Below are positions 44,996-62,288 of a stretch of DNA of 64,000 nucleotides, one piece after another. Where the stretch lies: the IMG/VR virus record IMGVR_UViG_3300032323_001214, positions 62,001 to 126,000 of that record. One strand, written 5' to 3'. Both the position numbers and the translations under genes were made by a program. Under the pieces are notes generated by a model. The model did not search any database. It saw only the letters and a program-made list of their open reading frames with translations, and was not told the origin of the DNA. Numbering within the stretch: the first letter of the stretch is position 1; the number at the start of each line of letters is the position of its first letter.

Positions 44996-45312
44996 TAATT
45001 TGGGAAGCTCCTCCTATTGTCAAGCCTGAATTCAGGTTATACTATGACGATAAAGGTAATGTTTTATTTTATACCTGTGATAAACCCGAAGGTAATTATT
45101 TAGTCATTGACGCCCCTACATTTGCTGCCGGAAGACCTGATATTAGAGTAATTGATGGTAGGATATCCACTGTCGTTGTTAGTGCAGTTGTTAGTAAAAT
45201 TATGCCAAACACCGACGGTGTAAGTTGCGCAGAAGAAGATGTTAGTATCGTGGTTGACGCAACCTATGTAGGTAATACTATTAAATGGAAAACAGTAACA
45301 TATGAACTCTGA
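44983..45312 (+). CDS. Hypothetical protein, 109 aa
   Basis: Overlaps both neighbours; FRLYYDDKG motif. Confidence 0.65.
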   Translation: MEHVIIWEAPPIVKPEFRLYYDDKGNVLFYTCDKPEGNYLVIDAPTFAAGRPDIRVIDGRISTVVVSAVVSKIMPNTDGVSCAEEDVSIVVDATYVGNTIKWKTVTYEL

Positions 45313-46255
45313 AGATATTATTGATGTTGCAGATTTAGACTGCATCTATCTAAGTTATGATGAACCACAGAAAGAAGAATTCTGGCTCAAGATTAAAAAC
45401 ATGGTGCCTTGGGCAAAACGTGTTGATGGGGTAAAAGGAAGTGATGCGGCACACAAAGCCGCCGGCGCCGCAAGCGATACTGAACGTTTTATTCTAATCG
45501 ACGGCGACAACATGCCAGAAGAAAGTTTCTTTAATATTCAATTAGATTTTACGGGTAAAGACGAGTCATTTAAACGAGCGCAATTTCGTTGGAAAGCCAT
45601 CAATAATATTAACGGGCTGAGATATGGTAATGGCGGAATGAGTTCTTGGACTAAAGAATATGTCGCCAACATGAAAACACATGAACATCAAAAAGACGGC
45701 GATGTGTCACGTATTGCTGATTTTTGTATGGGCGGAGATGATAATTTATATTGGGCCATGTGGGACTGTTATTCAACTACATATCCAAACATGACACCAT
45801 TTCAAGCATGGCGTGCAGGATTCCGTGAGGGTGTCAAAATGAGTTTAGATAGAGGAGCTCGCCCCACAGTAGATCAATTCAAAGAAACAGTAGCAAGTCG
45901 TAACTTAGATAACTTAACAATATGGCATAATGTTGGTGCAGATGTTGAAAACGGAGAGTGGGCTATATATGGCGCACGACTTGGCACGTACATGACCATG
46001 CTCACAGAATGGGATCATTCAAACGTTCAATGGTTTGATAATTATATTATATTGTGGGAAGAACATGTGAACAGAAATCCTGTGCGTGAGTCAGTATTAT
46101 TGGGTGACGCATTACAGGACAAACTAGGACTACCAATGTGTACATTAGACAGTGTACAAAGTAAATTCTTTAAACGCCATTATGGTGCAGACAAATATAA
46201 CCGAGGACCTCTTGTAACCGAGATGGAAGTTGTTCGACAGATTCAGGGTTGGTAA
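45302..46255 (+). CDS. Glycosyltransferase-like protein (GT-A, DGD motif)
   Basis: YLSYDEP, RVDGVKGSDAAHKAA, FILIDGDN, YGNGG, AWRAGFREGVKM. Confidence 0.6.
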   Translation: MNSEDIIDVADLDCIYLSYDEPQKEEFWLKIKNMVPWAKRVDGVKGSDAAHKAAGAASDTERFILIDGDNMPEESFFNIQLDFTGKDESFKRAQFRWKAINNINGLRYGNGGMSSWTKEYVANMKTHEHQKDGDVSRIADFCMGGDDNLYWAMWDCYSTTYPNMTPFQAWRAGFREGVKMSLDRGARPTVDQFKETVASRNLDNLTIWHNVGADVENGEWAIYGARLGTYMTMLTEWDHSNVQWFDNYIILWEEHVNRNPVRESVLLGDALQDKLGLPMCTLDSVQSKFFKRHYGADKYNRGPLVTEMEVVRQIQGW

Positions 46256-47820
46256 TGAGCGGAGAATACGACCAATTTGCTAGGGATATGCGTGACCGCT
46301 TGAATGCGGTCAGTCCATCTCTGTGTCTTGCTAAGTGGCAACAAGTTTCTATTCACTTACCTAGTGGATTGACACAAAGTTGCTACCATCCACCTACACA
46401 TAAAATACCCTTAGATTTATTAAAAGATAATCCTAGCGTACTACACAACACTCCTATTAAGATACATGAGCGCAAACAAATGCTTGAAGGTGTAAGACCT
46501 GAGGGCTGTAGCTATTGTTGGAAAGTAGAAGATGCCAAAAGTGATGATCCTAAAGGTCACATGAGTGACAGACATTATCGTAGTAGTGAATGGTGGAATG
46601 CACCCACGTTTGACGAAGTTACTACAAACAGTTTTGATTATGATGTTATACCGCGGTATGTAGAAGTCAACTTCAATCAAGCATGTAACTTCAAATGTAT
46701 GTACTGTAGCCCTCACCTATCCACTAGTTGGGAAGAAGAAGTTAAAAAGCACGGTGGCTATAAATTAGCACACATGACACATAACAATTTGCAGTCACTT
46801 GAAGAAAAAGGATTAATGCCACTTAAAGTAGCAAATAGAGACAATCCTTATGTTGAAGCATTTTGGCAATGGTTCCCTGAAATCTACCGTAAACTACGTG
46901 TGTTCAGAATGACCGGCGGCGAACCGCTTATGGACAAGAACACATTCAAAGTGTTAGACTATGTGAATGAAAATCCTCATGGTCAGCTTGAGTTATCTAT
47001 AACAAGCAACATGTGTCCTCCGGATCAGAAGTTGTTTGATACTTTCTTAACTAAAGTAAAAGCAATTGAAGAATTACGTACCTACGAAGATAAAGAAAAT
47101 TTCAACGAACACTCAGGCAACCATTGGTATGTAGATAAAGGATTCAAACATTTTTGGTTATTCGTATCATTAGATGGTTTTGGTAAACAAGCGGAATATA
47201 TGCGTACTGGATTAGAGTTTGAACGTATGCTCAACAACGTTCGCACATTCTTGCGTGAAACAAAGTACTCTACTGTGAGTTTCATTAATACGTTCAACAT
47301 TCTGAGTATTCCAAGTCTACATAATTTCCTAGCTATGATCTTAGAATTACGTGCTGAGTTTGGTGGAAGAAGTCAAGTTGAATTTGAGATTGCACCAGAA
47401 CAAACTGAAACAGAAAAAGAACAAAATATTGTCCATAAAGTTTACACACAAAAGAAGTTTCAGCGTGTATTCTTTGACATTCCTATTCTACGTTATCCAC
47501 CGTGGTTCAGTATTCAAAATGCAGGAGAATATGGGATTACCGAAGTAGAACGTTGTCTGAAATATATGGAAGATAATGTACAAGATGGTGATTATTTAGA
47601 GACATTTGAAGGTTTTAAACCATATGAGATATTGAAAATAAAAAGAGATTTGGCTATTATGAAAGAATCTCTACCAGTAGAACAGTTGCAACTAAATAAA
47701 AAGAACTTCTACATGTTCATCACAGAATATGATAGACGCAGACAAACTAATTTTATAGAAACTTTCCCAGAACTAAAAATGTACTGGAGAGAGTGTATCA
47801 AAGCACATACCAAACATTAA
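46255..47820 (+). CDS. Radical SAM enzyme with N-terminal twitch-like domain (#1, SCxH subtype)
   Basis: CLAKW...SCYH...CSYCW; CNFKCMYC; GGEP; TAATG overlap gives a start at 46255. Confidence 0.9.
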   Translation: MSGEYDQFARDMRDRLNAVSPSLCLAKWQQVSIHLPSGLTQSCYHPPTHKIPLDLLKDNPSVLHNTPIKIHERKQMLEGVRPEGCSYCWKVEDAKSDDPKGHMSDRHYRSSEWWNAPTFDEVTTNSFDYDVIPRYVEVNFNQACNFKCMYCSPHLSTSWEEEVKKHGGYKLAHMTHNNLQSLEEKGLMPLKVANRDNPYVEAFWQWFPEIYRKLRVFRMTGGEPLMDKNTFKVLDYVNENPHGQLELSITSNMCPPDQKLFDTFLTKVKAIEELRTYEDKENFNEHSGNHWYVDKGFKHFWLFVSLDGFGKQAEYMRTGLEFERMLNNVRTFLRETKYSTVSFINTFNILSIPSLHNFLAMILELRAEFGGRSQVEFEIAPEQTETEKEQNIVHKVYTQKKFQRVFFDIPILRYPPWFSIQNAGEYGITEVERCLKYMEDNVQDGDYLETFEGFKPYEILKIKRDLAIMKESLPVEQLQLNKKNFYMFITEYDRRRQTNFIETFPELKMYWRECIKAHTKH

Positions 47821-47829
47821 GGAAAATAA

Positions 47830-49362
47830 ATGGCAGGAAAAAAACACGAAGAATCGTTTGCACAATATAAAGCAAGATTGATTGACCCAATTAGCGATAG
47901 CTATTGCGCGGCTAAATGGCTTAATGCAACAATCTGGCTGGGTAACGGACAAACAACTAGTTGTCACCATCCACTGGGTCATCAAATCGATGCAGGAGAA
48001 TTGCAAACTAATCCATCAGCTATTCATAACACACCACATAAGAAATATATGCGTAAGTTGATGCAAGAGGGTAAACGACCACAAGAGTGTGAATACTGTT
48101 GGAAGATTGAAGATATAGGTCGTGATAACATGAGTGACCGTGTTTACAAAACTGCCGTATTTGAAGAATCAGATATTCTACACACTGCTAAAGCAGATTG
48201 GCAAGAGAATACAATGTTAAAAACATTGGAAATCAGTTTTGACCGAACATGTAACTTTGCTTGTAGTTATTGCAATCCAAGTTTCAGTACAACATGGGTC
48301 AAAGATATTCATAAATTTGGACCTTATCGCAATATTGACGGTGATGCACGTAGTCACTTTATCAACGAAGCCGACCATGCAAAACCATTACCCGATGATG
48401 TTAACCCATATAGTCAAGCGTTTTGGCGCTGGTGGGAACAAGAAAACGGTCTGGCAGACAACCTAGAAGAAATCAGAATCACAGGTGGAGAACCACTTAT
48501 GGCACCTGGTGTTTGGAAGTTGTTTGAGTGGTTCAAAGATAACCAGGAACGGGTGAAGAATCGCAAAGATGGTAAGGTTATGCGTTATGCAATTAACAGC
48601 AATCTGGTTCCCAAAGATGATATTATGGACAGACTAATTGAATTGAGTCACTATGTTCCTCATTTAGAAGTTTATACTAGTTGCGAAGCATTTGGTTCTC
48701 ATGCAGAATATATTCGTGATGGATTCGTTTGGAGCAAATGGAAAGCTAACTTAACACGATTGCACACTGAAGGTAATATTAAAAAGACTCATATGATGAT
48801 GACCATCAATAGTTTATGTCTAGCTAGCATTACTGAGTTCATGGATGAAATGATGGCTTTCAAGAAAACTCATGACACTGTTTACCCCACTATGAGTTTG
48901 AATATTTTACGTTTCCCTAGTTTCCAAAGTTGTGCTATGTTACCAACAGAGATTCGTCAAAAGTATAAAGACAAATTACAAGTTTGGTTAGATCAACAAA
49001 TTGCTATGGATTTGCAAACATCTGATGGTAAACAAATGCTAATGAGTATTGAACGTGAGCAAACACAACGGTTAATTGATTACCTTGACGTTGTTAAAAC
49101 ACCACACAAGAATGTCAAAGACATTGAACAAAACCGTCGTGACTTCAAACAGTTCTATGCTCAGTATGATGTCCGTCGTGGTAAGAGTTTCCGTGATACG
49201 TTTCCTTCAGAGTTTGTCGCTTTCTATGATAGTATTCAAACTGATTTACCAACAGCAGAGGAAATTATTACACAAAATTATCGTGCAGGAGTTGATTTGA
49301 TCCCAGATCATCCACCGGAAGATCCAAGCAAAGATGTGTTTGTCAACCCTGATTTACAATGA
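47830..49362 (+). CDS. Radical SAM enzyme with N-terminal twitch-like domain (#2, SCxH subtype)
   Basis: CAAKW...SCHH...CEYCW; CNFACSYC; GGEP. Confidence 0.9.
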   Translation: MAGKKHEESFAQYKARLIDPISDSYCAAKWLNATIWLGNGQTTSCHHPLGHQIDAGELQTNPSAIHNTPHKKYMRKLMQEGKRPQECEYCWKIEDIGRDNMSDRVYKTAVFEESDILHTAKADWQENTMLKTLEISFDRTCNFACSYCNPSFSTTWVKDIHKFGPYRNIDGDARSHFINEADHAKPLPDDVNPYSQAFWRWWEQENGLADNLEEIRITGGEPLMAPGVWKLFEWFKDNQERVKNRKDGKVMRYAINSNLVPKDDIMDRLIELSHYVPHLEVYTSCEAFGSHAEYIRDGFVWSKWKANLTRLHTEGNIKKTHMMMTINSLCLASITEFMDEMMAFKKTHDTVYPTMSLNILRFPSFQSCAMLPTEIRQKYKDKLQVWLDQQIAMDLQTSDGKQMLMSIEREQTQRLIDYLDVVKTPHKNVKDIEQNRRDFKQFYAQYDVRRGKSFRDTFPSEFVAFYDSIQTDLPTAEEIITQNYRAGVDLIPDHPPEDPSKDVFVNPDLQ

Positions 49363-50750
49363 CAAACAAAATAATTCCTATATGGGAACATGCAAAGCCC
49401 CATAAAGATAGTAAGAACAAGGTGTTTTGCATGGCACCTTGGACTCACACTTACATAAGTCCTCAAAGCGAACGCAGATTATGCTGTGCTAGTAGAGAGG
49501 AACATTCGTTCCAGAAACAATATATTGACAGTAGCAACGATAGTAAGTATGGAGAAGTCAAAGAATCAAAAACTGCATTAGATGACTATAAACCGGTTAG
49601 TTTAAAAGAACACTGGAATAGTGAATACATGAAAGATATTCGTGTAAAACTAATGCGCGGCGAAGAGATTCCGCAGTGTGATGTATGTAACAAAAATCTA
49701 TTGATGGAAGGACACAGCTATCGCGGCTGGTTTACTGGTTCTTTGTTTCATGACAAGATACAAGAAGCATTTGACAAGACAGACGACACTGGTTACACTA
49801 CAATGGAACCGATCTCGTTTGATTATAGATTCAGTAACCTATGTAATTTTAAATGTCGCATGTGCGGAGAACAACTAAGTTCAACATGGGAGACTGAAAA
49901 GAAAATTCACAATATGTGGGACGAGAAAAATCAACCTTTCATGGTTCCTGAAATTAAATCTGCTATGCAAAACTTTCAGCAGACAGTAGTTGAACCAGAA
50001 TTCCGTGATGCAGTAAGTCGTGGTATTGTAGAAGAAATGTATTGGGTTGGTGGTGAACCATTAATGTATGATGTACATTGGTGGACATTAGAAGAAATGT
50101 TGCGCAACGGTAGTAATAAAAAATGCTATATGCGTTACAATAGTAATTTAAGCCGTGTTCAATTTGGTGACAAAAATTTATATGATTATCTTCCATTGTA
50201 CAAAGACTGGATGATGTGTGCTAGTATTGATGGTACAGGTGAAATTGTCGAATACATTCGCACGGGTATCAAGTGGGACAAGTGGTTAGAGAATTTTAAG
50301 AAAGGTCTTGAGTTACCAAATGGTAAAGATAAGATGGTTCTTGATTTGACATTGACTGCACCCGGTATGTTCAGTTTAAAAGAACTATTTGATTTAAGCA
50401 TTGAGTTGGATGTTAAAATTGAGACTAAAACCACATTCGGTTTTCATCCTGATATAATGTGGACACCTCTTAGCTGGCCCCGTGAAATATTAGATGAAGT
50501 TGTTGACGATATACTTGAATATATTCGACCTCGTGTTACATGGAAACAACATACTTTAGTTGGTAATTTAGAAGCATTAAAGAATACTCGCAAGACTCAT
50601 GCAGAGGAATGGCCTGATACTTATAAGCAAGCTGCAAAAAACGGTAAGGGCTGGGTCGAGAGACTTGAACAAATACGAGGTGGTCCTACTACACTGCGTG
50701 GCATTTATAGTCGTAATTCAAAATTATTAGAATGGTGGGACAACATATGA
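49359..50750 (+). CDS. Radical SAM enzyme with N-terminal twitch-like domain (#3, CC subtype)
   Basis: CMAPW...LCC...CDVC; CNFKCRMC; GGEP. Confidence 0.9.
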   Translation: MTNKIIPIWEHAKPHKDSKNKVFCMAPWTHTYISPQSERRLCCASREEHSFQKQYIDSSNDSKYGEVKESKTALDDYKPVSLKEHWNSEYMKDIRVKLMRGEEIPQCDVCNKNLLMEGHSYRGWFTGSLFHDKIQEAFDKTDDTGYTTMEPISFDYRFSNLCNFKCRMCGEQLSSTWETEKKIHNMWDEKNQPFMVPEIKSAMQNFQQTVVEPEFRDAVSRGIVEEMYWVGGEPLMYDVHWWTLEEMLRNGSNKKCYMRYNSNLSRVQFGDKNLYDYLPLYKDWMMCASIDGTGEIVEYIRTGIKWDKWLENFKKGLELPNGKDKMVLDLTLTAPGMFSLKELFDLSIELDVKIETKTTFGFHPDIMWTPLSWPREILDEVVDDILEYIRPRVTWKQHTLVGNLEALKNTRKTHAEEWPDTYKQAAKNGKGWVERLEQIRGGPTTLRGIYSRNSKLLEWWDNI

Positions 50751-51925
50751 GTAAAACAATGTGTGTGCTACCTTGGATGCATTTAGCTACGCACCCTAAT
50801 GGTGGTGCAAGTCTCTGTTGCCGCAGTAATCATACAAATGCTATAAGCTGGGCAAAGAAAGCGGAAACTAATAGTATAGTCACATTAGATAATGACAACA
50901 TTATTGACATTATGAACAGTAATACCTTCGTCAAAGTCAGACAAGATATGATAGATGGTAGACGTCCTATCGAATGTGAAGGTTGCTGGAAAGATGAAGA
51001 TAGTGGTCTAAAAAGTAAACGTCAATATGAGAATGAGCGTTGGGCACACATTATCCCCAAACTTGAACAAACGGCAAAGCTTAATGATATCAACTTAATA
51101 TATGTAGAACTACGTTTGGGTAATGTGTGTAACAATGCTTGCTTAACTTGCAACAGTTATAGCAGTACTAAATGGTATCCTGATGAGAAGAAAATTGCCA
51201 ATGACTTACCTTGGTTTCAATTAAGACCAATGGAAAATTTCAAATGGTTTGAGAATGATGAGTTCTATTTAGAATTAGCAAACAAAAGTCGAGAAGTAGA
51301 AGAAATCTATATCAATGGAGGCGAACCTACGTTGATTAAGGCTCACTTTGAATACTTGAAGCACTTGATTACATTAGGTACAGCACAAAACGTACACTTG
51401 GTTTACAGTTTGAACATGTTGGATATACCTGACAATCTAATTGAATTATGGAAAAGTTTCAAACAAGTCACGGTAAATGCAAGTATTGATGATTTAGGTG
51501 AGCGTAACTATTATATTCGTTATCCTACTAAGTGGGAAGAGACAATTGCAAGTATTGAAAAATTAACTAAGTTACCAAACTTAAATTGGCATGTAACACA
51601 AACTGTTAGTATACTCAACATTTACCATTTAGCAGAGTTTGGTAATTGGTTAGAAACTAATTACAACAAAACACCTCACCATAATTATGTAATCTACCCA
51701 GACTATTTAAGTTTAGCAACATTGCCCGATTTTTATAAAGAAGAATTGCGTAGTCATTATGCAAGTAGACTACCTGAATGGCAACGCAAAGATTTATTTA
51801 ATAAACTACATGAGCCCTATCAACCAGACTTGCTAAAAAAAGCAAAAGAGTTTATAATAGCAGTTGATAAAGCACGTGGACTAGATTATAAAAACTACAT
51901 TCCAGAATTAAAAGATATACTATGA
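50747..51925 (+). CDS. Radical SAM enzyme with N-terminal twitch-like domain (#4, CC subtype)
   Basis: CVLPW...LCC...CEGCW; CNNACLTC; GGEP; ATGA overlap gives a start at 50747. Confidence 0.9.
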   Translation: MSKTMCVLPWMHLATHPNGGASLCCRSNHTNAISWAKKAETNSIVTLDNDNIIDIMNSNTFVKVRQDMIDGRRPIECEGCWKDEDSGLKSKRQYENERWAHIIPKLEQTAKLNDINLIYVELRLGNVCNNACLTCNSYSSTKWYPDEKKIANDLPWFQLRPMENFKWFENDEFYLELANKSREVEEIYINGGEPTLIKAHFEYLKHLITLGTAQNVHLVYSLNMLDIPDNLIELWKSFKQVTVNASIDDLGERNYYIRYPTKWEETIASIEKLTKLPNLNWHVTQTVSILNIYHLAEFGNWLETNYNKTPHHNYVIYPDYLSLATLPDFYKEELRSHYASRLPEWQRKDLFNKLHEPYQPDLLKKAKEFIIAVDKARGLDYKNYIPELKDIL

Positions 51926-54362: not shown

Positions 54363-54370
54363 AGGTTGTT

Positions 54371-55687
54371 ATGTTGGATAGAAAAATAGAAGATTTACCA
54401 AAAAATTTTTGTAGTGTTGCTTGGTTGCAAATACATACTGAACCTGATGGCAAAGTATTCCCCTGTTGTTATTACAGTCATAAACGTGAACATGATTTAG
54501 GTAATTGGAATCAAGAAAAGATTGGTGATATCTTTCATAATGACAAGTGGAATAATCTTAGAAAAGAGTTTCTAGATGGTAAACGTCCAGATGCATGTGC
54601 TAGATGCTGGAAAGAAGAAGATGCTGGTATTGTTAGTATGCGTAATCGTTTTAATGAACGATATGCCAATTTTCCCGACTACACAAATCAAAATAGCTAT
54701 AATAAATTCAAAGACATTATTAGTTTAAGCAATGAAGATGGCTCAGTTGATGAGGATATAAAATTAGCCACAGTTGATTTGATATTCAACAACTTATGCA
54801 ATATGAAATGTAGGACATGCGGATCAGGACTAAGTACAGCATGGATACCGGATCAAATCAAATTAGGTAGATCAAACAAACCAATATCATTATTGACTAA
54901 TGAAACTATTACTCACATGAAAGATGATTTGGTTGCACTTGTAAACATGGTAGATCCATACACCGAGATACACTTTAGTGGTGGTGAACCCATGATGCAA
55001 GAAGATCATTATTTGTTCCTGCAATTATTATTAGATATGGGTAAGACTAAAGTTAAAATTCGGTACAATACAAATCTAACAACGTACACATTGAAAGATT
55101 ACCATGCATTTGAAATGTTAAGGCATTTTGATTGTGTGTTTATTGTAGGAAGTATTGATGCAATGGGTGCGCAAGGTGAATATATCCGTAAAGGTTTTAA
55201 CTGGGAACATGCGCTTGAGTGGATAAAAACTTGTAAAGAATACTTACCCAATGCTGATTACGGAATCAGTGCTGTATTTGAATTACTGAATGCTTCCGCT
55301 TCAGTTGACTTACATCGTTACATGTGCGAAAATGATTTATTCAAACGTAGTAATGGTTCAAACTTTGGGTTTTATTTAAACACATTGCATGAGCCCGGTT
55401 GGTTAAAAACGACATTGTTGCCACCTGAGGTTAAATTAGAAGTTACTGAAAAAATTAATAAACATATAGCCTGGTTATCAGAAACACAAGAGCATGATAT
55501 GCACTATGATGTATATGTGGATCACTGGAAAAATGCAATCACACTAATGAACGGTGCAGACCATTCTAATTTCATACCTAATTTTTATTATGAAACTAGA
55601 CTATTAGATAAGATTCGTGATGAAAAGTTTGAAGAAGTGTTCCCTGAACTACATGAAAAGATGAAGAAATATGACAAACAAATTTAA
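54371..55687 (+). CDS. Radical SAM enzyme with N-terminal twitch-like domain (#7, CC subtype)
   Basis: CSVAW...DGKVFPCC...CARCW; CNMKCRTC; GGEP. Confidence 0.9.
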   Translation: MLDRKIEDLPKNFCSVAWLQIHTEPDGKVFPCCYYSHKREHDLGNWNQEKIGDIFHNDKWNNLRKEFLDGKRPDACARCWKEEDAGIVSMRNRFNERYANFPDYTNQNSYNKFKDIISLSNEDGSVDEDIKLATVDLIFNNLCNMKCRTCGSGLSTAWIPDQIKLGRSNKPISLLTNETITHMKDDLVALVNMVDPYTEIHFSGGEPMMQEDHYLFLQLLLDMGKTKVKIRYNTNLTTYTLKDYHAFEMLRHFDCVFIVGSIDAMGAQGEYIRKGFNWEHALEWIKTCKEYLPNADYGISAVFELLNASASVDLHRYMCENDLFKRSNGSNFGFYLNTLHEPGWLKTTLLPPEVKLEVTEKINKHIAWLSETQEHDMHYDVYVDHWKNAITLMNGADHSNFIPNFYYETRLLDKIRDEKFEEVFPELHEKMKKYDKQI

Positions 55688-56984
55688 TCCAGTCGAAATG
55701 GCTAAAAATAGTAAAACATTTTGCATCTTCCCATGGATACAACAATATGTAGGTCCGCCCGGTGACGTGAAACCGTGCTGTGTTTACGACAATCAAGCTG
55801 AGATTGGTAATTTAAAAGAAAATACGTTATCTGAAATTTGGAATAACGATAAGACTAAGCAAATGCGTTTGAATTTTCTTAACGGGGTTGAAGAACCCAG
55901 TTGTAGTATATGCAATCGCCGTGCAGCATTGGGTCATGCCCACAAGAATCAATATAATAAAATGTTCTTTGATCAGGATGAAGAAATTCAGAATATTGTC
56001 GCAAACACAAATCCAGACGGATCATTAGATGACCATAAGTTATATTACATTGACGTTAGGTTTAACAATCTATGTAATCTAAGTTGTCGTAGTTGTGCCC
56101 CTCACTTTAGTACTGGTTGGGTATTGGATCATAGAAAGCTGTATAACACAAAGCGTAAAAGAGATAAAGATGATGGATTTCAGTTTCCAGGTAAAACTGA
56201 AGGTCAAGCATTAGAAGAAATAATCCCACATCTAGCAACAGCAAAAATGATTTACTTTGCAGGTGGAGAACCATTAATTCAAAAAGAACATTACGAGGTT
56301 CTCGAAAAACTTATTGAATTTGGAAATACTGATTTAGAAATTCGCTATAACACAAACTTCAGCAATTTTAAACTGAAGAAATATGACAATATATTAGAGT
56401 ACTGGAAGAAGTTTAGCAACGTTCACGTATATGCTAGCTTGGATGGTAGTCATGAAAAGGGTGAATACTGGCGCAACGGTCTAGATTGGAAACAAGTCAT
56501 AGAGAATCGTAAACAAATGATGGAAGAATGTCCCCATGTTCATTTTATGATATCATATACACTAAGTTGGCCTAATGCACTAAACCTTGTAGAGTTTCAT
56601 AAAGAATGGGCAGAACTAGGATATTTAAAGCCAGAGAATATGTTAGTTAACCCATTAGATACACCACCTTACTATTGTTTAAAAAATATTCCAGATTGGA
56701 AGAAGCGTGAAATTGAAGAAGCGTTGCAAAAGAACATAAACTGGTTAAGATCAATTAACCCTGAATTTGCCATCATAACTCAGTACGAAACTGTAATTAA
56801 ATTTATGTGGGACAAAACTGGACAATACCATTCAGGTATAGATGAAAGCTTGAAAGAATTTAATAAGATTACTACTAAACTAGATGACATTCGTGATCAA
56901 AGTTTCTTTGATGTTTATCCCGAACACATGAATATCAAAAATTATTTAATTCATAACAATTTAAATATGGAGTTTAAGTACTGA
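55671..56984 (+). CDS. Radical SAM enzyme with N-terminal twitch-like domain (#8, CC subtype)
   Basis: CIFPW...GDVKPCC...CSIC; CNLSCRSC; GGEP. Confidence 0.9.
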   Translation: MTNKFNPVEMAKNSKTFCIFPWIQQYVGPPGDVKPCCVYDNQAEIGNLKENTLSEIWNNDKTKQMRLNFLNGVEEPSCSICNRRAALGHAHKNQYNKMFFDQDEEIQNIVANTNPDGSLDDHKLYYIDVRFNNLCNLSCRSCAPHFSTGWVLDHRKLYNTKRKRDKDDGFQFPGKTEGQALEEIIPHLATAKMIYFAGGEPLIQKEHYEVLEKLIEFGNTDLEIRYNTNFSNFKLKKYDNILEYWKKFSNVHVYASLDGSHEKGEYWRNGLDWKQVIENRKQMMEECPHVHFMISYTLSWPNALNLVEFHKEWAELGYLKPENMLVNPLDTPPYYCLKNIPDWKKREIEEALQKNINWLRSINPEFAIITQYETVIKFMWDKTGQYHSGIDESLKEFNKITTKLDDIRDQSFFDVYPEHMNIKNYLIHNNLNMEFKY

Positions 56985-58237
56985 TGGACGAAAAGAAATT
57001 ATTTAAGATACGAGATGAAACAAGCAAAACTTTTTGTCTAGCAAAATTTCACGAAGCAAGTATCTGGGTGTACTCGGGTAAGATTGCTAGTTGCCACTAT
57101 ACCCCTTTCATTCAAGTAGGTAACACAGTAGATACATTTTATAACCCTGCAGAGAAGCGTGAACAACAAAAGCGTATGCTTGCAGGAGAACAACCGCCTG
57201 CATGTGATAGTTGCTGGCGCTATGAAAATCTAGGATTGCAAAGTGATAGGACACGTAAGAGTTTAAGTTTCACTGACCATTTAAACAAAGAAGATTATAA
57301 GAATCCTAACTATGTATTCAAGCCCAAAGCATTAGAACTAGCATTCCAGAATACATGTAACTTAGCTTGTAGCTATTGTAGCCCTCAATTTAGTACAAGC
57401 TGGATGAACGATATCAGAGTGAATGGTGTTTATCAAAGTATCATCACTGATGACCGCAGACACTATCAAAAAGATATCAACGAAATTAATGAGATGATTG
57501 ACCCTCCTGACATGACATTGTTCTGGGAGTGGTTCGAAAGTGTTGCTACTAGTTTAGAATCTATCCGGGTTTCAGGCGGAGAGCCATTAATGCATGAGGA
57601 AGTTTTTCGTGTGTTTGAAATGATGACAGAGATAAACCCAAACATTGAATGCGTTATACACAGCAACCTCTGTCAGAAGCCGGTAATCATGGATAGATTC
57701 TTTGATAAGATTAGTGGATTGTCTAATCTACGTATGAATATTAGTAATGAATCTGCAGGTGAGACTGCTGAATTTGTGCGTGAGGGTATGATATATTCTG
57801 AATGGTTAGAGAATATTGAACGATTAGCAAACAGTACAGTCAAAGAGTTTAGCATAAGCACAACTGTGAGTGCAATTGCACTGCAATCACTTGACCAAAT
57901 GTATTTGGACATTATTGATATACGCAATCGTTCTAAAGTAAAACCTTATATCTCTATCAATATGGTAGATAAACCAGATTTTCAAGGCTTTGCTTGCTTA
58001 ACACGTGCAGAGCGTGACTTCTATATCAATAAATATACTAAGTTTTACGATTCAATTAAAGATGAATTGTTATCGGTAGAGCATGAGCATTGCAATAGAT
58101 TATTAAAATTTTTAGATGAAGGTTTTATAAAAGAAACACAACCTGCCCTTCGTAAAGATAGTGACATGTTCTTTGAACAATACACTAAGCGTAGAAATAA
58201 ACCAGACAATTTAGCAAAATATATAGGATTAAAATAA
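56984..58237 (+). CDS. Radical SAM enzyme with N-terminal twitch-like domain (#9, SCH subtype)
   Basis: CLAKF...SCHY...CDSCW; CNLACSYC; GGEP. Confidence 0.9.
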   Translation: MDEKKLFKIRDETSKTFCLAKFHEASIWVYSGKIASCHYTPFIQVGNTVDTFYNPAEKREQQKRMLAGEQPPACDSCWRYENLGLQSDRTRKSLSFTDHLNKEDYKNPNYVFKPKALELAFQNTCNLACSYCSPQFSTSWMNDIRVNGVYQSIITDDRRHYQKDINEINEMIDPPDMTLFWEWFESVATSLESIRVSGGEPLMHEEVFRVFEMMTEINPNIECVIHSNLCQKPVIMDRFFDKISGLSNLRMNISNESAGETAEFVREGMIYSEWLENIERLANSTVKEFSISTTVSAIALQSLDQMYLDIIDIRNRSKVKPYISINMVDKPDFQGFACLTRAERDFYINKYTKFYDSIKDELLSVEHEHCNRLLKFLDEGFIKETQPALRKDSDMFFEQYTKRRNKPDNLAKYIGLK

Positions 58238-59412
58238 TGGAAGAACAAATGTATGATATAGATTGTGTAAAAAGATTACACATTGAGTTATCAAGTAGAT
58301 GCAATGCTAGCTGTCCTGCATGTAGTAGAAACCACAGTGGCGGTCCAGTAGCAGAAGATTTGGAATTAACTGAATTATCAATTGGTGATATCAAACGTAT
58401 GGTTCCTGTAGAGATTGCAAGAAATATAAAAAGTATAAATTTTTGTGGTAATGTAGGCGATCCGGGTATGGCACCTGATCTACTAGAAATTATACAATAT
58501 TTCAGAGAACATTCACCTAAGGTTGTACAACAAATAAGAACAAACGGCGGGATGCGTAATCCAGAGTTCTGGACTAAATTAGGTAATTTCTTTGCAAGTC
58601 AAGCAGATCCTAAAAATAAGTTTTTGTTTAATCTAGCAGGAGTGGTATTCAGTGTCGACGGGTTAGAAGATACTAATCACATTTATCGTAGGGGCGTCAA
58701 GTGGGATAAACTGATAGCTAACATGAGAGCATACAGTGCCACAGGTGCATACGCTATATGGGAATGGTTAGTGTTTGAACATAACCAACATCAAATTGAA
58801 GAAGCTAAAGCACTTGCAAAAGAATTAAATTTTCAATTTGTTGTAAAAAATCCATTAGGTTTTGGTGAATATGATGGTAAAGCTAAAGGTTTATCAGTAT
58901 ATAACAAAGAGGGCGAATATGAATATTCTATTTGGCCTGCTAACCACACGGGCCCTAAATTAGGACCTAATTTTGGTCAGAAAGTAGATTTTACTAAGAT
59001 GGTTAAAACTATACCTATCATAAATGAGTTTAGTAAAGAATTAGAAAAAACATCTACAATAAAGTGTAAATCTATTGAGCGCCAAGAGTCACAAGAAGTG
59101 TACATTTCTGCTACAGGATATATGTTACCTTGTTGTTTTTTAGGAGGCGTGTTCGGTCAATTTAATTCTTCATACTCTAGATATCAATTTAACACAATGA
59201 TTAACGATTATGGATTGGATGTATTTAATTTAAATAAACGTTCGATGCTAGAGATAATTAAGGGTCCTGAATTTTCAAAATTCTTTTTAAATGGATGGAA
59301 AGCAGATACTATTGAAAATGGTAAATTATTATTTTGTTTGGAAACATGCGGGAATAAATCTGCTATGGATAATTTATATACTACTAAAACAATTACAAAG
59401 GAAGCACAATAA
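58237..59412 (+). CDS. Radical SAM enzyme with C-terminal twitch/SPASM-like domain (#10)
   Basis: N-terminal CNASCPAC, FCGNVGDP, SVDG; C-terminal C...GYMLPCCF...CLETC. Confidence 0.88.
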   Translation: MEEQMYDIDCVKRLHIELSSRCNASCPACSRNHSGGPVAEDLELTELSIGDIKRMVPVEIARNIKSINFCGNVGDPGMAPDLLEIIQYFREHSPKVVQQIRTNGGMRNPEFWTKLGNFFASQADPKNKFLFNLAGVVFSVDGLEDTNHIYRRGVKWDKLIANMRAYSATGAYAIWEWLVFEHNQHQIEEAKALAKELNFQFVVKNPLGFGEYDGKAKGLSVYNKEGEYEYSIWPANHTGPKLGPNFGQKVDFTKMVKTIPIINEFSKELEKTSTIKCKSIERQESQEVYISATGYMLPCCFLGGVFGQFNSSYSRYQFNTMINDYGLDVFNLNKRSMLEIIKGPEFSKFFLNGWKADTIENGKLLFCLETCGNKSAMDNLYTTKTITKEAQ

Positions 59413-60143
59413 TGAGAATAGGTGTATTTGGTGATAGTTTTGCGGATAGAACCGCCTACAATCCAGAGAGTAATATCACAGAAGATGAATCTTGGATTGC
59501 TGACATGGAGAATGCCGGTCATAAAATAACTACATATGGTAAAACTGGATCTTCTACTTGGTATTCCTTTCAACAATTTTTAGCTCACCATGAACAGTTT
59601 GACCATATTGTATTTTGCTACTCATCGTTGCATAGAATACATCACTTGCCAGAAGGTCTTGAAGATTTGAGTTTCTTAACAACACCGGATGAGTTGTATG
59701 CATTAAGAAGAAATAAAAATTTATCTAAACAACAAGAATTAGAAATGGTTAGAATATTAACTGGACATATCCCCAATATATCATCGCCGTTCGATGTTTG
59801 GGTAAAACAAAAAATATTTGATGATGTAAACTTATTGTGTTATAGTAATAATATCAAACTTGTAAATCTACTTACGTTCGATGATAGAAAAGATAAAAAT
59901 CTCAACATGTCCTTAGAATCAAGACACGGGGACTGTTTGTATAATTTGTTCAATGTAAGTAAGAAGGAATTACCATCGATGGGTGAAGTAGATAACAGAT
60001 GGTGTCATTTATCTAAAGAAAACAACACGATACTGTCCGGTATTATATTTGATTCACTAGTTAGTAACGATAAAAATATTATTGATTTGTATAAACACAA
60101 TGGATTTATATATAGTAAAGAAATTACTGCGAGATATGAATGA
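59412..60143 (+). CDS. SGNH/GDSL-like hydrolase or acyltransferase
   Basis: GVFGDSF block I, GSS block II, C-terminal DNRWCHLS. Confidence 0.6.
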   Translation: MRIGVFGDSFADRTAYNPESNITEDESWIADMENAGHKITTYGKTGSSTWYSFQQFLAHHEQFDHIVFCYSSLHRIHHLPEGLEDLSFLTTPDELYALRRNKNLSKQQELEMVRILTGHIPNISSPFDVWVKQKIFDDVNLLCYSNNIKLVNLLTFDDRKDKNLNMSLESRHGDCLYNLFNVSKKELPSMGEVDNRWCHLSKENNTILSGIIFDSLVSNDKNIIDLYKHNGFIYSKEITARYE

Positions 60144-60889
60144 GCACAATTGGTAGAATAGTAATATTGGGAGATAGTTACACATTTGGTCATGGATGTT
60201 CAGATAGAGAATATTACTATGATCAAAAATTGCAAAGCTTTGTAGGTGATTATAAACCATTTGAAAACAGAATTCCTAGTAAGTTTTGCTGGGCAACATT
60301 ATTACAACAACAATATCCAAACATTGAAGTAGTTAATCTATCGGTACCCGGACATACTAGTCAGGGTATGTTTAGAGACTTGACAAACTATTACTATGAC
60401 AATGAATATTCACCTAATGATATGATAATGTTTAATGGAACATTCTCTAACAGAATCGAAATAGCATTGGGAGATAGTCCAGAAGTTACTGTCCCGTGGG
60501 TTATGGGATGGGATAAGCAATCATATGATGAAGGTAAAATGCAATATAATATTGCTAAAAAAATGTATATAACACATTTGTTCAATGATGATATAGGTTA
60601 TAATCTCTCAATTACCGGACTAATGGCAGCGTATGCATTTGCTCATTCACGCAACTTAAAATTCTTATGGAGTTTACCTACATATGACTATTCAGCTAAA
60701 GTATTACACAATATATTACCGTCGATGAAAAGCACTAATATTTCTGAGATAGTTAATTATGATTATTCAGGGAAACTGGATTTAAAATTTAATGAAACGT
60801 GTGTTGCATCTGATTTTCATATTAATGACAAGGGTCATGCTATATATTTTGAAAGAGAAATATTACCTGCGATACAACGCCTTCTATAA
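60140..60889 (+). CDS. SGNH/GDSL-like hydrolase or acyltransferase
   Basis: ILGDSYTFGHG, NLSVPG, SDFHINDKGH. Confidence 0.7.
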   Translation: MSTIGRIVILGDSYTFGHGCSDREYYYDQKLQSFVGDYKPFENRIPSKFCWATLLQQQYPNIEVVNLSVPGHTSQGMFRDLTNYYYDNEYSPNDMIMFNGTFSNRIEIALGDSPEVTVPWVMGWDKQSYDEGKMQYNIAKKMYITHLFNDDIGYNLSITGLMAAYAFAHSRNLKFLWSLPTYDYSAKVLHNILPSMKSTNISEIVNYDYSGKLDLKFNETCVASDFHINDKGHAIYFEREILPAIQRLL

Positions 60890-60892
60890 ATA
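60885..60892 (+). promoter_or_regulatory. Possible internal late promoter
   Basis: Exact TATAAATA ending 5 nt before the ATG at 60898. Confidence 0.45.
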
Positions 60893-60897
60893 GCTTA

Positions 60898-62184
60898 ATG
60901 CAAAAAACTTTCCCTATACAAAATGACGCCGCCTGTTTATATAAATGGGCATGGAGCACAGTCTTCTTAAGCAGAGGAACTACTGCAAGTTGTCATCGTG
61001 GTTATCATTGGCGATTAAATGAAGATAACTTCATGGATTTTCACAATCATCCAGGTAAATTAAGTGACCGAGAGAAAATGGCTAACGGTGACTGGCCTAG
61101 TAATGGATGTGAGTACTGCCGCGATGTAGAAAAAGCCGGCGGGGTAAGTGATAGGGTAGGATTTGTCAATAATTCAATTGAATTACTTCCTCCTGAGATG
61201 AAAGATTTACAAGTTCGTGCATATGAGTATGACAACATTCCATTGAGTGTGAGTCCTACACTACTTGAAGTTTACTTCAATAACGTATGCAACCAATCAT
61301 GTGTTTATTGTACTCCGGGTTTTAGTAGTCAAATTGAACAAGAAGTTCGTAAGTATGGACCAATAGATTTTAACAAAGATTACAGTAACTGGCGCCCTGA
61401 TACAAAATATGAATTATATAAAGAGAAGTTTTGGGAGTGGATGGAAAAGCATTCTCATTCATTACAGATTCTTCAAGTATTAGGAGGTGAACCACTATAT
61501 CAAAAAGAGTTTGAACAATGTTTAGACTTCTTTGATAAAAATCCTAGACCTAATCTAATATATAGAACGTTTAGTAACTTAAAGCATGACCCTGCAAAGT
61601 TCAAGGAAAAGATACAACGTGTGCAAAATTTGATTGACCAGGGAAAATTAAAACAAATGGAATTTGTTTGTAGTATCGATTGCTGGGGACCTGAGATTGA
61701 ATATGTGCGTGATGGTTTGATATTAGAAGATTGGGAAAACAATATTGATACGTTAGTAGATACCCCCGGAGTGTCTATTAATATTCATGCTACTCTCACT
61801 GCATTGACACTACCTACTTTGTATCAATTGATTGAGAAAACTGTATCATGGCAACGTCCTGATAAGTATGTGGGTATAAATTGGAATACAGTAGTAAGTC
61901 CTACTCCGTTTAATCCATACCATTTTGGTGAGCATTTGTCCCCTTTTATTGATACAGCCATAGAAACATTACAAAAGTTTCCTGACTTTACGGAATCTAG
62001 TAATTTACAAAAACATCTGCACGGTATTAAACAGCAGTTGATAAGTACTCCTGTTAATAAAGCAGAAGTTGCTAATTTAGTAGGTTTTTTAGATGAAATA
62101 GATAGACGTAGAAATCGAAATTGGAGGAAGGTATTTCCACAAATCGAACAAATAGTAAATACTATTAACACAGGAGAATTATAA
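60898..62184 (+). CDS. Radical SAM enzyme with N-terminal twitch-like domain (#11, SCH subtype)
   Basis: CLYKW...SCHR...CEYC; CNQSCVYC; GGEP. Confidence 0.9.
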   Translation: MQKTFPIQNDAACLYKWAWSTVFLSRGTTASCHRGYHWRLNEDNFMDFHNHPGKLSDREKMANGDWPSNGCEYCRDVEKAGGVSDRVGFVNNSIELLPPEMKDLQVRAYEYDNIPLSVSPTLLEVYFNNVCNQSCVYCTPGFSSQIEQEVRKYGPIDFNKDYSNWRPDTKYELYKEKFWEWMEKHSHSLQILQVLGGEPLYQKEFEQCLDFFDKNPRPNLIYRTFSNLKHDPAKFKEKIQRVQNLIDQGKLKQMEFVCSIDCWGPEIEYVRDGLILEDWENNIDTLVDTPGVSINIHATLTALTLPTLYQLIEKTVSWQRPDKYVGINWNTVVSPTPFNPYHFGEHLSPFIDTAIETLQKFPDFTESSNLQKHLHGIKQQLISTPVNKAEVANLVGFLDEIDRRRNRNWRKVFPQIEQIVNTINTGEL

Positions 62185-62288
62185 TGTTTAAATGGATTAA
62201 AAATTTATACCACACTATTAAAGCAGAGATACGTTATAGAAAACGTATCAAAGAACTACGTAAACGTGACCCCTTCATTTATAAATGA
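62184..62288 (+). CDS. Small basic peptide, 34 aa (not in ORF track)
   Basis: MFKWIKNLYHTIKAEIRYRKRIKELRKRDPFIYK; AGGAG RBS at 62172-62176; TAATG and ATGA overlaps with both neighbours. Confidence 0.75.
   Translation: MFKWIKNLYHTIKAEIRYRKRIKELRKRDPFIYK

What the first reader, a model, noticed from the sequence alone, without database searches (positions are those of the whole stretch)
46255..62184. The ten N-twitch radical SAM paralogs split 5:5 into two subtypes with co-varying Fe-S motifs
Seen: enzymes with an N-terminal C-x-x-K-[WF]...SC(Y/H)(H/Y/R) motif (46255, 47830, 51922, 56984, 60898) all have CxxxCxYC. Enzymes with ...[LP]CC (49359, 50747, 53199, 54371, 55671) all lack the aromatic residue before the third Cys (CRMC, CLTC, CVTC, CRTC, CRSC). 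Most share a C-terminal D-x-x-R...F...[FY]PE tail. The auxiliary-cluster domain precedes the SAM barrel, the reverse of the BtrN/MoaA order. Inference: two chemistries (3-Cys+His or open-site versus 4-Cys auxiliary cluster), or heterodimer partners given the equal numbers.
Basis: partly seen in the sequence, partly recalled or inferred. Interest (0 to 1): 0.75.

Follow-up and report, generated by a model that had tools for sequence, protein, structure and literature searches.

The report
Two subfamilies of phage N-twitch radical SAM enzymes
A marine T4-like jumbo phage carries ten radical SAM enzymes with a front-mounted iron-sulfur domain; they fall into two ancient subfamilies, and the equal 5:5 count is a coincidence, so they are most likely independent sugar-tailoring enzymes and not paired partners.

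Summary
Ten genes (46255-62184) all pass NCBIfam NF033640 (N_Twi_rSAM). They split 5:5 into type A (CxxK[WF]...SC[HY]x, CxxxCxYC) and type B ([LP]CC, no aromatic residue). The same linkage holds in 274 homologs from 81 viral loci (143 A, 116 B, 4 mixed). With the motif columns masked, the trees put A on one side of a single branch (support 99-100).

Both interpretations fail. All four N-terminal Cys are invariant in both types, and B has a fifth, so "3-Cys+His versus 4-Cys" is not what differs. A:B ratios vary freely: 1:0, 2:5 and 4:11 in complete jumbo phages, 5:4 in an 84%-identical relative, and B alone in four of five bacterial genomes. The motif linkage is one evolutionary event. It is not repeated co-variation.

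The array lies in the host-recognition cluster of a T4-like phage: giant protein, tail fibres, GT8-like and GT-A-like glycosyltransferases, then the radical SAM genes, SGNH hydrolases and a carbamoyltransferase. Type A is found fused to glycosyltransferases elsewhere. The best reading is a set of independent glycan-tailoring enzymes. The family is curated but has no characterised member, and the function is inferred.

The parts
46255..47820 (+). N-twitch radical SAM, type A. This is the first gene of the conserved array ('A1'). A TTG at 46249 is an alternative start.
   Evidence: NF033640 284 bits; motifs CLAKW, SCYH and CNFKCMYC; 86% identical ortholog in L001
47830..49362 (+). N-twitch radical SAM, type A ('A2'). 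It is the ortholog of the single copy in Ralstonia phage RsoM2USA.
   Evidence: NF033640 298 bits; tblastn 49% identity to RsoM2USA; tree
49359..50750 (+). N-twitch radical SAM, type B
   Evidence: NF033640 305 bits, Pfam SPASM at residues 24-111; LCC and CNFKCRMC
50747..51925 (+). N-twitch radical SAM, type B (alternative ATG start at 50732)
   Evidence: NF033640 342 bits, Pfam SPASM at residues 11-86; LCC and CNNACLTC
51922..53208 (+). N-twitch radical SAM, type A. This protein was modelled.
   Evidence: NF033640 291 bits; AF2 model with pLDDT 96.8
53199..54362 (+). N-twitch radical SAM, type B. It is the most divergent copy and is absent from the close relative L203.
   Evidence: NF033640 179 bits, just over the cut-off; end branch of 3.1; no ortholog in L203
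54371..55687 (+). N-twitch radical SAM, type B
   Evidence: NF033640 330 bits, Pfam SPASM 7.6e-12
55671..56984 (+). N-twitch radical SAM, type B. This protein was modelled.
   Evidence: NF033640 363 bits, Pfam SPASM 5.2e-12; AF2 model with pLDDT 93.2
56984..58237 (+). N-twitch radical SAM, type A
   Evidence: NF033640 240 bits; CLAKF, SCHY and CNLACSYC
58237..59412 (+). Ordinary radical SAM with a C-terminal SPASM-like domain. It is not a family member and is absent from L203.
   Evidence: Pfam Radical_SAM at residues 16-170 and SPASM at 283-350; NF033640 only 47 bits, core only
59412..60143 (+). Probable SGNH-type hydrolase or acyltransferase. It has an N-terminal GDS motif but no Pfam match.
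   Evidence: Sequence MRIGVFGDSFADR; two paralogs in L203; assignment is an inference
60140..60889 (+). GDSL/SGNH hydrolase
   Evidence: Pfam Lipase_GDSL 1.5e-5; the family recurs in related loci
60898..62184 (+). N-twitch radical SAM, type A. It belongs to the deepest A sub-clade.
   Evidence: NF033640 235 bits; tree
62285..63133 (+). SGNH-like protein (weak match)
   Evidence: Pfam Lipase_GDSL 8.5e-4; matches the SGNH cluster profile
63130..64000 (+). Carbamoyltransferase (NodU/CmcH type), cut off by the window end
   Evidence: In the same BLAST cluster as L017:18674-20140, which has Carbam_trans_N and Carbam_trans_C
45302..46255 (+). Conserved partner gene directly upstream of the first type A gene. 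It is probably a GT-A-fold glycosyltransferase with a DGD motif.
   Evidence: Directly upstream in 42 of 72 loci; fused to a type A enzyme in P0032; weak GT2/Fringe matches in several members
43422..44995 (+). Two GT8-like (glycogenin-like) glycosyltransferase paralogs (43422-44222 and 44219-44995)
   Evidence: Family profile against PDB matches glycogenin at E 3.8e-6; present in 58 of 82 loci
40913..42109 (+). Tail-fibre or tail-spike protein with an intramolecular-chaperone domain
   Evidence: Pfam Peptidase_G2 7.7e-6; present in 43 of 82 loci
20835..40097 (+). Giant 6420-aa structural ORF that opens the cluster. Its position matches that of VrlC; it was not shown to be VrlC.
   Evidence: a 6349-aa ortholog in L203; PMC7029224 places the host recognition cluster after VrlC

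Best explanation
The ten genes belong to the curated but uncharacterised family N_Twi_rSAM. In this family a twitch-like Fe-S domain (a beta-hairpin flanked by Cys, then a helix carrying CxxC) sits in front of the radical SAM barrel.

The ten copies belong to two anciently separated lineages. Type A is one tightly conserved clade, with 54 positions at least 90% conserved, and it probably arose from within the looser and older-looking type B assemblage (22 such positions). Type B still resembles a canonical SPASM domain. The linked motif differences were fixed once, on the stem of A. They do not show repeated co-evolution.

Both types keep four invariant N-terminal Cys, so each should hold one fully Cys-ligated auxiliary [4Fe-4S] cluster alongside the SAM cluster. 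Type B has an additional free Cys next to a ligand.

The enzymes work as separate catalysts, not as A-B pairs. Gene numbers of each type rise and fall independently through gain and loss of cassettes.

Their setting is the host-recognition cluster of a marine T4-like jumbo phage, next to tail fibres, GT8-like, GT-A-like, GT7 and GT2 glycosyltransferases, SGNH enzymes, methyltransferases and a carbamoyltransferase. The most likely role is radical tailoring of sugars or glycans on the virion fibres or on the host envelope, such as oxidation, epimerisation, dehydration or decarboxylation. Each paralog would supply a different step or specificity.

Shown: family membership, the two clades, Cys conservation, free ratios and the gene neighbourhood. 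Inferred: cluster content, monomeric action and a glycan substrate.
For: Family: 10 of 10 copies pass the NF033640 cut-off.

Two clades: A lies on one side of a branch at 100 and 99 support with the motif columns masked, and at 99 in a tree of the core alone.

One event: CC/SC changes once and K changes once, while the aromatic residue changes four times, so there is only one independent contrast.

Cys: C1-C4 and the three SAM-cluster Cys are invariant or at least 97% conserved in both types.

Structure: the AF2 models are confident (pLDDT 96.8 and 93.2) and show the hairpin-plus-helix N-domain.

Free ratios.

Glycan context: GT8/glycogenin-like profile match at E 3.8e-6. The 45302 family lies directly upstream in 42 of 72 loci, and a GT7-LamG gene in 11 of 72. 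Type A is fused to GT2 in P0052 and P0127, and to the 45302 family in P0032. Carbamoyltransferase, GT2, GT7 and methyltransferase genes occur in related loci. SGNH genes occur in the phage and in bacterial loci. A Chitinophagales locus has two type B genes among GT4, a PMT_2-type GT-C, UbiA, SDR, GDSL and PhyH genes.

Literature: pelagimyophage host recognition clusters hold tail fibres, GT8 genes and variable radical SAM cassettes (PMC7029224). T4-like marine genomes with an A-type Fe-S carrier and 12 radical SAM genes have been reported (PMC5332604). This genome has Gp23 and an A-type carrier. The known twitch enzyme BtrN acts on an aminocyclitol sugar analogue with a 4-Cys auxiliary cluster (PMC9012708). 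BlsE, which acts on a sugar nucleoside, is the second-best PDB fold match.
Against: No member of the family has been characterised, and no substrate is known. Fold searches match only the generic radical SAM core, with TM below 0.5 against PDB and Swiss-Prot.

The glycan link rests on neighbourhood and a few fusions. Some of those fusions may be gene-calling artefacts between overlapping genes.

Many bacterial type B genes sit in uninformative neighbourhoods, for example in Reichenbachiella. An ABC exporter and PhyH oxygenases near some of them would also fit peptide or natural-product chemistry.

The root inside B carries a long-branch warning.

Cluster stoichiometry and ligation are inferred from sequence only. 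Model coordinates could not be read, so spatial relations between the motifs were not measured.
Confidence: 0.6

Rival explanations
1. A and B are subunits of obligate heterodimers, which would explain the equal numbers.
For: The window has 5:5. A and B genes are adjacent and often overlap, which is compatible with translational coupling. Arrays of AABBB form are common.
Against: Complete genomes carry 1:0, 2:5 and about 4:11. An 84%-identical relative has 5:4. Four of five bacterial genomes have B only, and many viral loci have A only. Among the 30 multi-domain proteins in the 150 best representatives, B-B fusions dominate and only one is A-B. The predicted A2-B1 complex scored 0.00, which is reported as no answer and not as evidence.
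Confidence: 0.04
2. The two types differ in auxiliary-cluster ligation (3 Cys plus His or an open iron site in A, as in MoaA, against 4 Cys in B) and hence in chemistry.
For: A carries conserved His or Tyr right after the second Cys (HH in 81 members, YH in 44), plus further A-specific His39 and His54. MoaA shows that a twitch cluster can have an open site that binds substrate (PMC9012708).
Against: All four Cys positions are invariant in A as well as in B, with the same spacing in both types. The residue that differs is an extra Cys in B, aligned to an invariant Ser in A, and is not a ligand missing from A.
Confidence: 0.1
3. The enzymes are peptide or protein maturases (RiPP-like). They would modify the giant protein, the tail fibres or a small peptide instead of sugars.
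For: Most characterised SPASM-type enzymes modify peptides (PMC11002830; PMC9012708). The best fold hits include SkfB, SuiB, CteB and anSME. ABC exporters and multi-copy PhyH oxygenases lie near some bacterial type B genes. One type A protein is fused to a subtilase fragment. The array follows a 6420-aa protein and fibre genes.
Against: No RRE/PqqD-type domain was found in any copy. The genes abut or overlap, leaving no room for precursor genes inside the array. The conserved partners are glycosyltransferases, SGNH enzymes and a carbamoyltransferase. The fusions are to GT2.
Confidence: 0.2
4. The enzymes act on nucleotides or DNA, for example by making modified nucleotides in the manner of viperin or MoaA, or hypermodified bases for anti-restriction.
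For: There are weak partial matches to viperin, MoaA and QueE models and fold hits to viperin, MoaA and QueE. T4-type phages use glycosyltransferases on DNA (discussed in PMC7029224).
Against: All those matches fall far below the family cut-offs and cover only the shared barrel. The array sits in the tail-fibre and host-recognition cluster, not in the replication or nucleotide-metabolism modules. Type B genes in bacteria lie in envelope-glycan contexts.
Confidence: 0.06

Closest known systems
NCBIfam NF033640 N_Twi_rSAM ('twitch domain-containing radical SAM protein')
   Same: All ten proteins match end to end above the curated cut-off. They share the architecture of an N-terminal Cys-rich twitch-like domain, a CxxxCxxC barrel and a helical C-terminal region.
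   Different: The model does not separate the A and B subfamilies. No function or paper could be found for the family.
BtrN (twitch radical SAM dehydrogenase in butirosin biosynthesis, PDB 4M7T)
   Same: One auxiliary [4Fe-4S] cluster bound by four Cys in a truncated SPASM module, and a carbohydrate-type substrate (PMC9012708). The number of Cys is the same as in these proteins.
   Different: BtrN's twitch domain follows the barrel, whereas here it precedes it. There is no significant sequence match, and BtrN is not among the listed fold hits.
MoaA (GTP 3',8-cyclase)
   Same: A twitch-class enzyme. The barrel aligns at rmsd 3.5-4 A over about 220 residues.
   Different: MoaA's auxiliary cluster has three Cys and an open iron that binds GTP, and it is C-terminal. 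The TIGR02666 scores here are 29-40 bits against a cut-off of 284.
SPASM-domain maturases (anSME, SkfB, SuiB, CteB; Pfam PF13186 and TIGR04085)
   Same: Four of the five type B N-domains pass the Pfam SPASM gathering score, and they share the G-x-x-x-P-C and CxxC signature.
   Different: Only 4-5 Cys are present, not the seven-Cys, two-cluster motif. The domain order is reversed. The type A domains do not match the Pfam model at all.
Radical SAM cassettes in the host recognition cluster of marine T4-like myophages (Zaragoza-Solas et al. 2020, PMC7029224; Nishimura et al. 2017, PMC5332604)
   Same: The genomic setting is the same: after the giant baseplate protein, among tail fibres and GT8 glycosyltransferases. 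Cassette number varies between close relatives, and the genome also carries an A-type Fe-S carrier.
   Different: Those papers only note 'radical SAM proteins'. They do not give the family, the N-terminal twitch architecture or the A/B split.

Membership tests
NF033640 N_Twi_rSAM | Full-length match above the curated cut-off (170 bits) | tested here: met
   179-363 bits for all ten copies. The 58237 protein fails at 47 bits.
NF033640 N_Twi_rSAM | Cys-rich twitch-like domain N-terminal to the CxxxCxxC barrel | tested here: met
   C-x18-C...C-x2-C lies about 56 residues before CxxxCxxC in all ten copies. Pfam SPASM hits fall at residues 11-111 and Radical_SAM at 89-330. The AF2 models show a hairpin and helix before the barrel.
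Twitch domain (truncated SPASM, one auxiliary cluster) | Enough Cys for one and not two auxiliary clusters | tested here: met
   Four invariant N-terminal Cys in A and five in B, with no CX5CX3C segment.
Twitch domain (truncated SPASM, one auxiliary cluster) | C-terminal extension of the radical SAM barrel, as described in the literature | tested here: not met
   The domain is N-terminal. PMC9012708 describes SPASM and twitch domains as C-terminal extensions.
Twitch domain (truncated SPASM, one auxiliary cluster) | Actually binds a [4Fe-4S] cluster | not testable with these tools
   This needs reconstitution with iron and sulfide analysis, EPR or Moessbauer spectroscopy.
SPASM domain (PF13186 / TIGR04085) | Pfam match above the gathering score | tested here: inconclusive
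   Met for four type B proteins (21.8-46.3 bits against 21.5). There is no match for 53199 or for any type A protein.
SPASM domain (PF13186 / TIGR04085) | Seven-Cys motif for two auxiliary clusters | tested here: not met
   Only 4-5 conserved Cys lie outside the SAM-cluster motif.
MoaA-type open-site auxiliary cluster | Three Cys ligands, with the fourth position vacant or non-Cys | tested here: not met
   The fourth Cys is invariant in both types.
RiPP radical SAM maturases | RRE/PqqD-like recognition domain or an adjacent precursor peptide gene | tested here: not met
   No such Pfam or NCBIfam domain was found. Genes in the array overlap or are 8-9 nt apart. Small ORFs elsewhere were not searched.
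Sugar-tailoring twitch enzymes (BtrN, BlsE, AprD4, DesII type) | Homology beyond the common barrel | tested here: not met
   BlsE TM is 0.38/0.48 over 256 columns. TIGR04466 BlsE scores 19.5 bits against a cut-off of 400. The resemblance is functional inference only.
Host recognition cluster of marine T4-like myophages | T4-type phage, with the cluster following a giant structural protein and holding tail fibres, GT8 genes and radical SAM cassettes | tested here: met
   Gp23 at E 6e-99; 6420-aa ORF; Peptidase_G2 fibre protein; GT8-like profile. The flanking gp14 and the identity of the giant protein as VrlC were not tested.

The most novel reading that the evidence does not exclude
Marine and soil jumbo phages carry a modular radical 'glyco-tailoring kit'. 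Its core would be a conserved pair made of a GT-A-type transferase (the 45302 family) and a type A N-twitch enzyme. This pair would install a radical-modified sugar on the receptor-binding fibres or on the host envelope. Variable type B cassettes, up to about 11 per genome, would diversify that glycan. In this reading the extra Cys next to a cluster ligand in type B serves as a hydrogen-atom donor (epimerase-like chemistry, as proposed from memory for NeoN and YydG), and type A uses its conserved Lys, His and Tyr set for an oxidative or eliminative step. That would be a new enzyme architecture with new carbohydrate chemistry, used for host recognition or superinfection exclusion.
Probability: 0.2. 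Interest if true: 0.75.

Novelty: new member of a known kind. Interest (0 to 1): 0.45.

Why it matters
N_Twi_rSAM is a very large family. It has 7,370 representatives at 50% identity with E no greater than 1e-30, and it has no characterised member and no solved structure.

This work makes three points:
- The family splits cleanly into a conserved type A and a diverse type B.
- Phage genomes carry from 1 to about 16 copies.
- The copies lie in glycan-building, host-recognition islands.

Together these points give enzymologists concrete targets: a compact A/B pair with confident models and a candidate substrate class. They also give phage biologists a hypothesis for what the 'radical SAM cassettes' noted in marine myophages do. 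The work further removes two attractive but wrong ideas, obligate pairing and a difference in Cys ligation.

Tried and rejected
- A megablast of the array against 50,697 phage records found nothing. A protein search found only Ralstonia phage RsoM2USA, where every neighbouring gene is annotated as hypothetical.
- Literature searches for 'N-terminal twitch' and NF033640 found nothing.
- Fold searches of the type A model against PDB and Swiss-Prot returned only generic radical SAM barrels with TM below 0.5. AFDB clusters returned only unnamed 'twitch domain-containing' proteins.
- The predicted complex of the conserved adjacent pair 47830+49359 scored 0.00, which the tool calls 'no answer'. I do not use it as evidence either way.
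- The 45302-family profile had no PDB sequence match. The protein atlas gave only viral hypothetical clusters for it and for the GT8-like protein.
It was redone with four type B sequences, so that sample is biased towards B. The viral sample was confirmed against a type A query and is biased towards A. The whole-genome counts avoid both biases.
- One look-up of encoding contigs was wasted on a guessed start codon.
- Pfam scans of the giant ORF and the baseplate genes added little.
- Model coordinates could not be read. I therefore could not measure whether the Tyr of CxxxCxYC lies near the N-domain motifs.
- Recent tandem duplication was considered and rejected. The paralogs share only 19-34% identity, and each has its own ortholog in related phages.

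Full report
WHAT IS THERE

The window is part of a 249.6-kb IMG/VR virus record, with CheckV completeness of 67%. The phage is T4-like: Gp23 matches at E 6e-99. It also encodes an A-type Fe-S carrier outside the window.

Between 46255 and 62184 lie ten co-directional genes, mostly abutting or overlapping. Each one matches NCBIfam NF033640, 'twitch domain-containing radical SAM protein' (N_Twi_rSAM), end to end and above the curated cut-off, at 179-363 bits against 170. An eleventh radical SAM gene, 58237-59412, interrupts the array. It has the ordinary order of barrel then SPASM-like domain and is not a family member.

CHECK OF THE OBSERVATION

- Type A comprises 46255, 47830, 51922, 56984 and 60898. 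These have C-x-x-K-[WF], then S-C-[HY]-[HYR], and CxxxCxYC.
- Type B comprises 49359, 50747, 53199, 54371 and 55671. These have [LP]-C-C and a non-aromatic residue before the third SAM-cluster Cys.

The Fe-S domain precedes the barrel. Pfam SPASM matches fall at about residues 11-111 and Radical_SAM at about 89-330.

The C-terminal tail is only partly as described. One Arg is invariant in all ten, D-x-x-R occurs in 8 of 10, and a strict [FY]PE occurs in 4 of 10.

The pattern is not peculiar to this window. In 274 family members from the window and 80 viral loci, the combinations are 143 (Ser, Tyr), 116 (Cys, non-Tyr) and only 4 (Cys, Tyr). The same holds in 133 members from bacterial or MAG loci.

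TWO LINEAGES, ONE EVENT

I masked the nine motif positions and built trees.
- FastTree on 258 rows puts all 143 type A on one side of a branch, with support 100. The A/B label changes once.
- IQ-TREE (LG+C20) on 93 rows gives the same split at 99, with a stem length of 1.36.
- A tree built from the barrel and C-terminal part alone, without any N-domain column and rooted with the ordinary radical SAM-SPASM family from the same loci, again recovers A at 99. It places the outgroup inside B. That join carries a long-branch warning, so 'A derived from within B' is likely but not secure.

On the tree the CC/SC state and the Lys each change once. The aromatic residue changes four times, three of them inside B with no change at CC. 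That leaves a single independent contrast. The 'co-variation' is therefore shared ancestry, and it carries no statistical evidence of functional coupling between the motifs.

Type A is far more constrained than type B, with 54 positions at least 90% conserved against 22. Type B has a conserved Arg in CxxxC-R-x-C.

The ten window paralogs are old. They share 19-34% identity, and each has its own ortholog in related contigs.

(i) Different cluster ligation. Four N-terminal Cys are invariant in both types. In the 46255 protein these are C24, C43, C85 and C88, arranged as C-x18-C...C-x2-C. The position that differs is an additional Cys in B, which aligns to an invariant Ser in A. It is not a ligand missing from A.

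By the literature's criteria, BtrN has four Cys and MoaA has three Cys with an open iron (PMC9012708). Both types here look BtrN-like in ligand count. The AF2 models (pLDDT 96.8 for A and 93.2 for B) show the expected hairpin-plus-helix module ahead of the barrel.

(ii) Heterodimer partners. They do.
- Local arrays read AABBB (the commonest), AABB, AAB, AA and A.
- Whole genomes give 2 A to 3 B plus 2 CC/aromatic forms, about 4 A to 11 B, and 1 A to 0 B in three complete 337-367-kb phages.
- Two incomplete phage genomes give 2:6 and 2:9.
- A relative whose A2 protein is 84% identical lacks the 53199 ortholog and the 58237 gene and has an extra methyltransferase. Its eight array genes read AABBABBA, which gives 5:4 if a truncated 419-aa gene at the locus end is the 60898 ortholog.
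- Four of five bacterial genomes searched whole have B only: Reichenbachiella faecimaris, a Crocinitomicaceae chromosome, Eubacterium sp. and a Chitinophagales MAG. A Bacteriovoracaceae MAG has both types.
- Thirty of the 150 best 50%-identity representatives are multi-domain proteins. Among them B-B dominates, with two A-A and one A-B.
- A predicted complex of the conserved adjacent pair 47830+49359 returned 'no answer', with score 0.00. I do not count it either way.

The 5:5 count is a coincidence of this genome.

CONTEXT AND LIKELY FUNCTION

The neighbourhood is conserved across the viral loci.
- Upstream genes run in this order: the giant ORF (6420 aa), a 206-aa protein, a fibre protein with a Peptidase_G2 chaperone domain, two small conserved proteins, and two paralogs whose family profile matches glycogenin (GT8) at E 3.8e-6.
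- Next comes a 317-aa family with a DGD motif and weak GT2/Fringe matches. It lies directly upstream of the first type A gene in 42 of 72 loci.
- In 11 further loci that position is held by a GT7-plus-lectin protein.
- Downstream of or within the arrays lie SGNH/GDSL proteins, a NodU/CmcH-type carbamoyltransferase, GT2 genes and methyltransferases.

Type A domains occur fused to GT2 domains (P0052, P0127) and to the 45302 family (P0032).

In a Chitinophagales locus, two type B genes sit among GT4, a PMT_2-type GT-C, UbiA, SDR, GDSL and four PhyH genes. GDSL genes recur near bacterial type B genes in 15 loci.

This layout matches the published 'host recognition cluster' of marine T4-like myophages. 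That cluster lies after the giant VrlC protein and holds tail fibres, GT8 glycosyltransferases and radical SAM cassettes whose number differs between close relatives (PMC7029224). It also matches the report of T4-like marine genomes with an A-type carrier and up to 12 radical SAM genes (PMC5332604).

I therefore favour radical tailoring of sugars or glycans, with each paralog contributing a distinct step. Whether the target is the virion fibres or the host envelope is open.

This is inference from neighbourhood and fusions. No family member is characterised. Fold searches find only the common barrel, and I found no paper on the family. A peptide- or protein-modifying role remains a real rival, because SPASM-type enzymes are mostly peptide maturases and ABC exporters and PhyH genes lie near some type B genes. 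However, there is no RRE domain and no room for precursor genes inside the array.

COMPARISON WITH WHAT IS KNOWN, AND NOVELTY

The proteins are members of a curated family, so the architecture, 'twitch first, barrel second', is already recorded in NF033640. It departs from the textbook description of SPASM and twitch domains as C-terminal extensions.

I could not find three things described elsewhere: the clean A/B subdivision, the extent of paralog expansion in jumbo phages (1 to about 16 copies per genome), and the tight link of type A to a glycosyltransferase partner.

I rate this as new members of a known but unstudied kind, with moderate interest.

LIMITS

The viral sample was seeded with a type A query and the bacterial sample with type B queries. 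Only the whole-genome counts are free of that bias, and they cover eleven genomes. The window's own genome is incomplete. Root placement is uncertain. Cluster content, oligomeric state and substrate are all untested.

Noticed in passing
window 20835-40097 (+): A single 6420-aa ORF opens the cluster, and a 6349-aa ortholog exists in the relative L203. Pfam finds almost nothing in its first or last 1500 residues. By position it corresponds to the giant VrlC baseplate protein of marine T4-like phages, but this was not shown.
   Followed up: partly
window 58237-59412 (+): An ordinary radical SAM enzyme with a C-terminal SPASM-like domain (it also has a PCC motif) sits inside the N-twitch array. 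Its family occurs in about 21 related loci, but the gene is missing from the 84%-identical relative L203.
   Followed up: partly
L203:7817-8428 compared with window 46255: The close relative has a Methyltransf_23 gene inserted between the 45302-family gene and the first type A gene. It also lacks the 53199 ortholog. This shows cassette-level gain and loss within one lineage.
   Followed up: yes
window 59412-60143, 60140-60889, 62285-63133: Three SGNH/GDSL-like paralogs flank the last type A gene. GDSL genes also recur next to type B genes in bacterial loci (15 loci).
   Followed up: partly
G000:C1:179816-180118 (outside the window): The phage encodes an A-type Fe-S cluster carrier (Pfam Fe-S_biosyn, E 4e-21). 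This fits a need to mature its many Fe-S enzymes, as noted for marine T4-like genomes in PMC5332604.
   Followed up: partly
P0001-P0150; L106 and L099 (Elusimicrobia MAG): Thirty of the 150 best family representatives carry two or three N-twitch modules in one protein, mostly B-B. One Elusimicrobia MAG has six or seven tandem genes of 680-1040 aa. I did not check whether these are true fusions or gene-calling read-throughs.
   Followed up: no
L088, L092, L093, L086 (MAGs labelled Haliscomenobacter, Rickettsiales, Betaproteobacteria, Verrucomicrobia): These contigs carry phage-type arrays (AABBB in L088) that are nearly identical in tree position to the arrays of the jumbo-phage contigs L017, L022 and L027. 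They look like phage contigs binned into bacterial MAGs.
   Followed up: no
L105:10964-18250 and other Chitinophagales loci: There are 47 PhyH-type 2OG/Fe(II) oxygenase genes across 12 bacterial loci that carry type B genes, with four in L105 alone. They lie beside GT4, GT-C, UbiA and SDR genes. This looks like an unusual envelope-glycan or glycolipid cluster.
   Followed up: partly
related viral loci, cluster 'c6' (e.g. L026:11355-12461): A 368-aa family with no Pfam match occurs 65 times in 31 loci, inside or just downstream of the radical SAM arrays. It is absent from this window. Its function is unknown.
   Followed up: no
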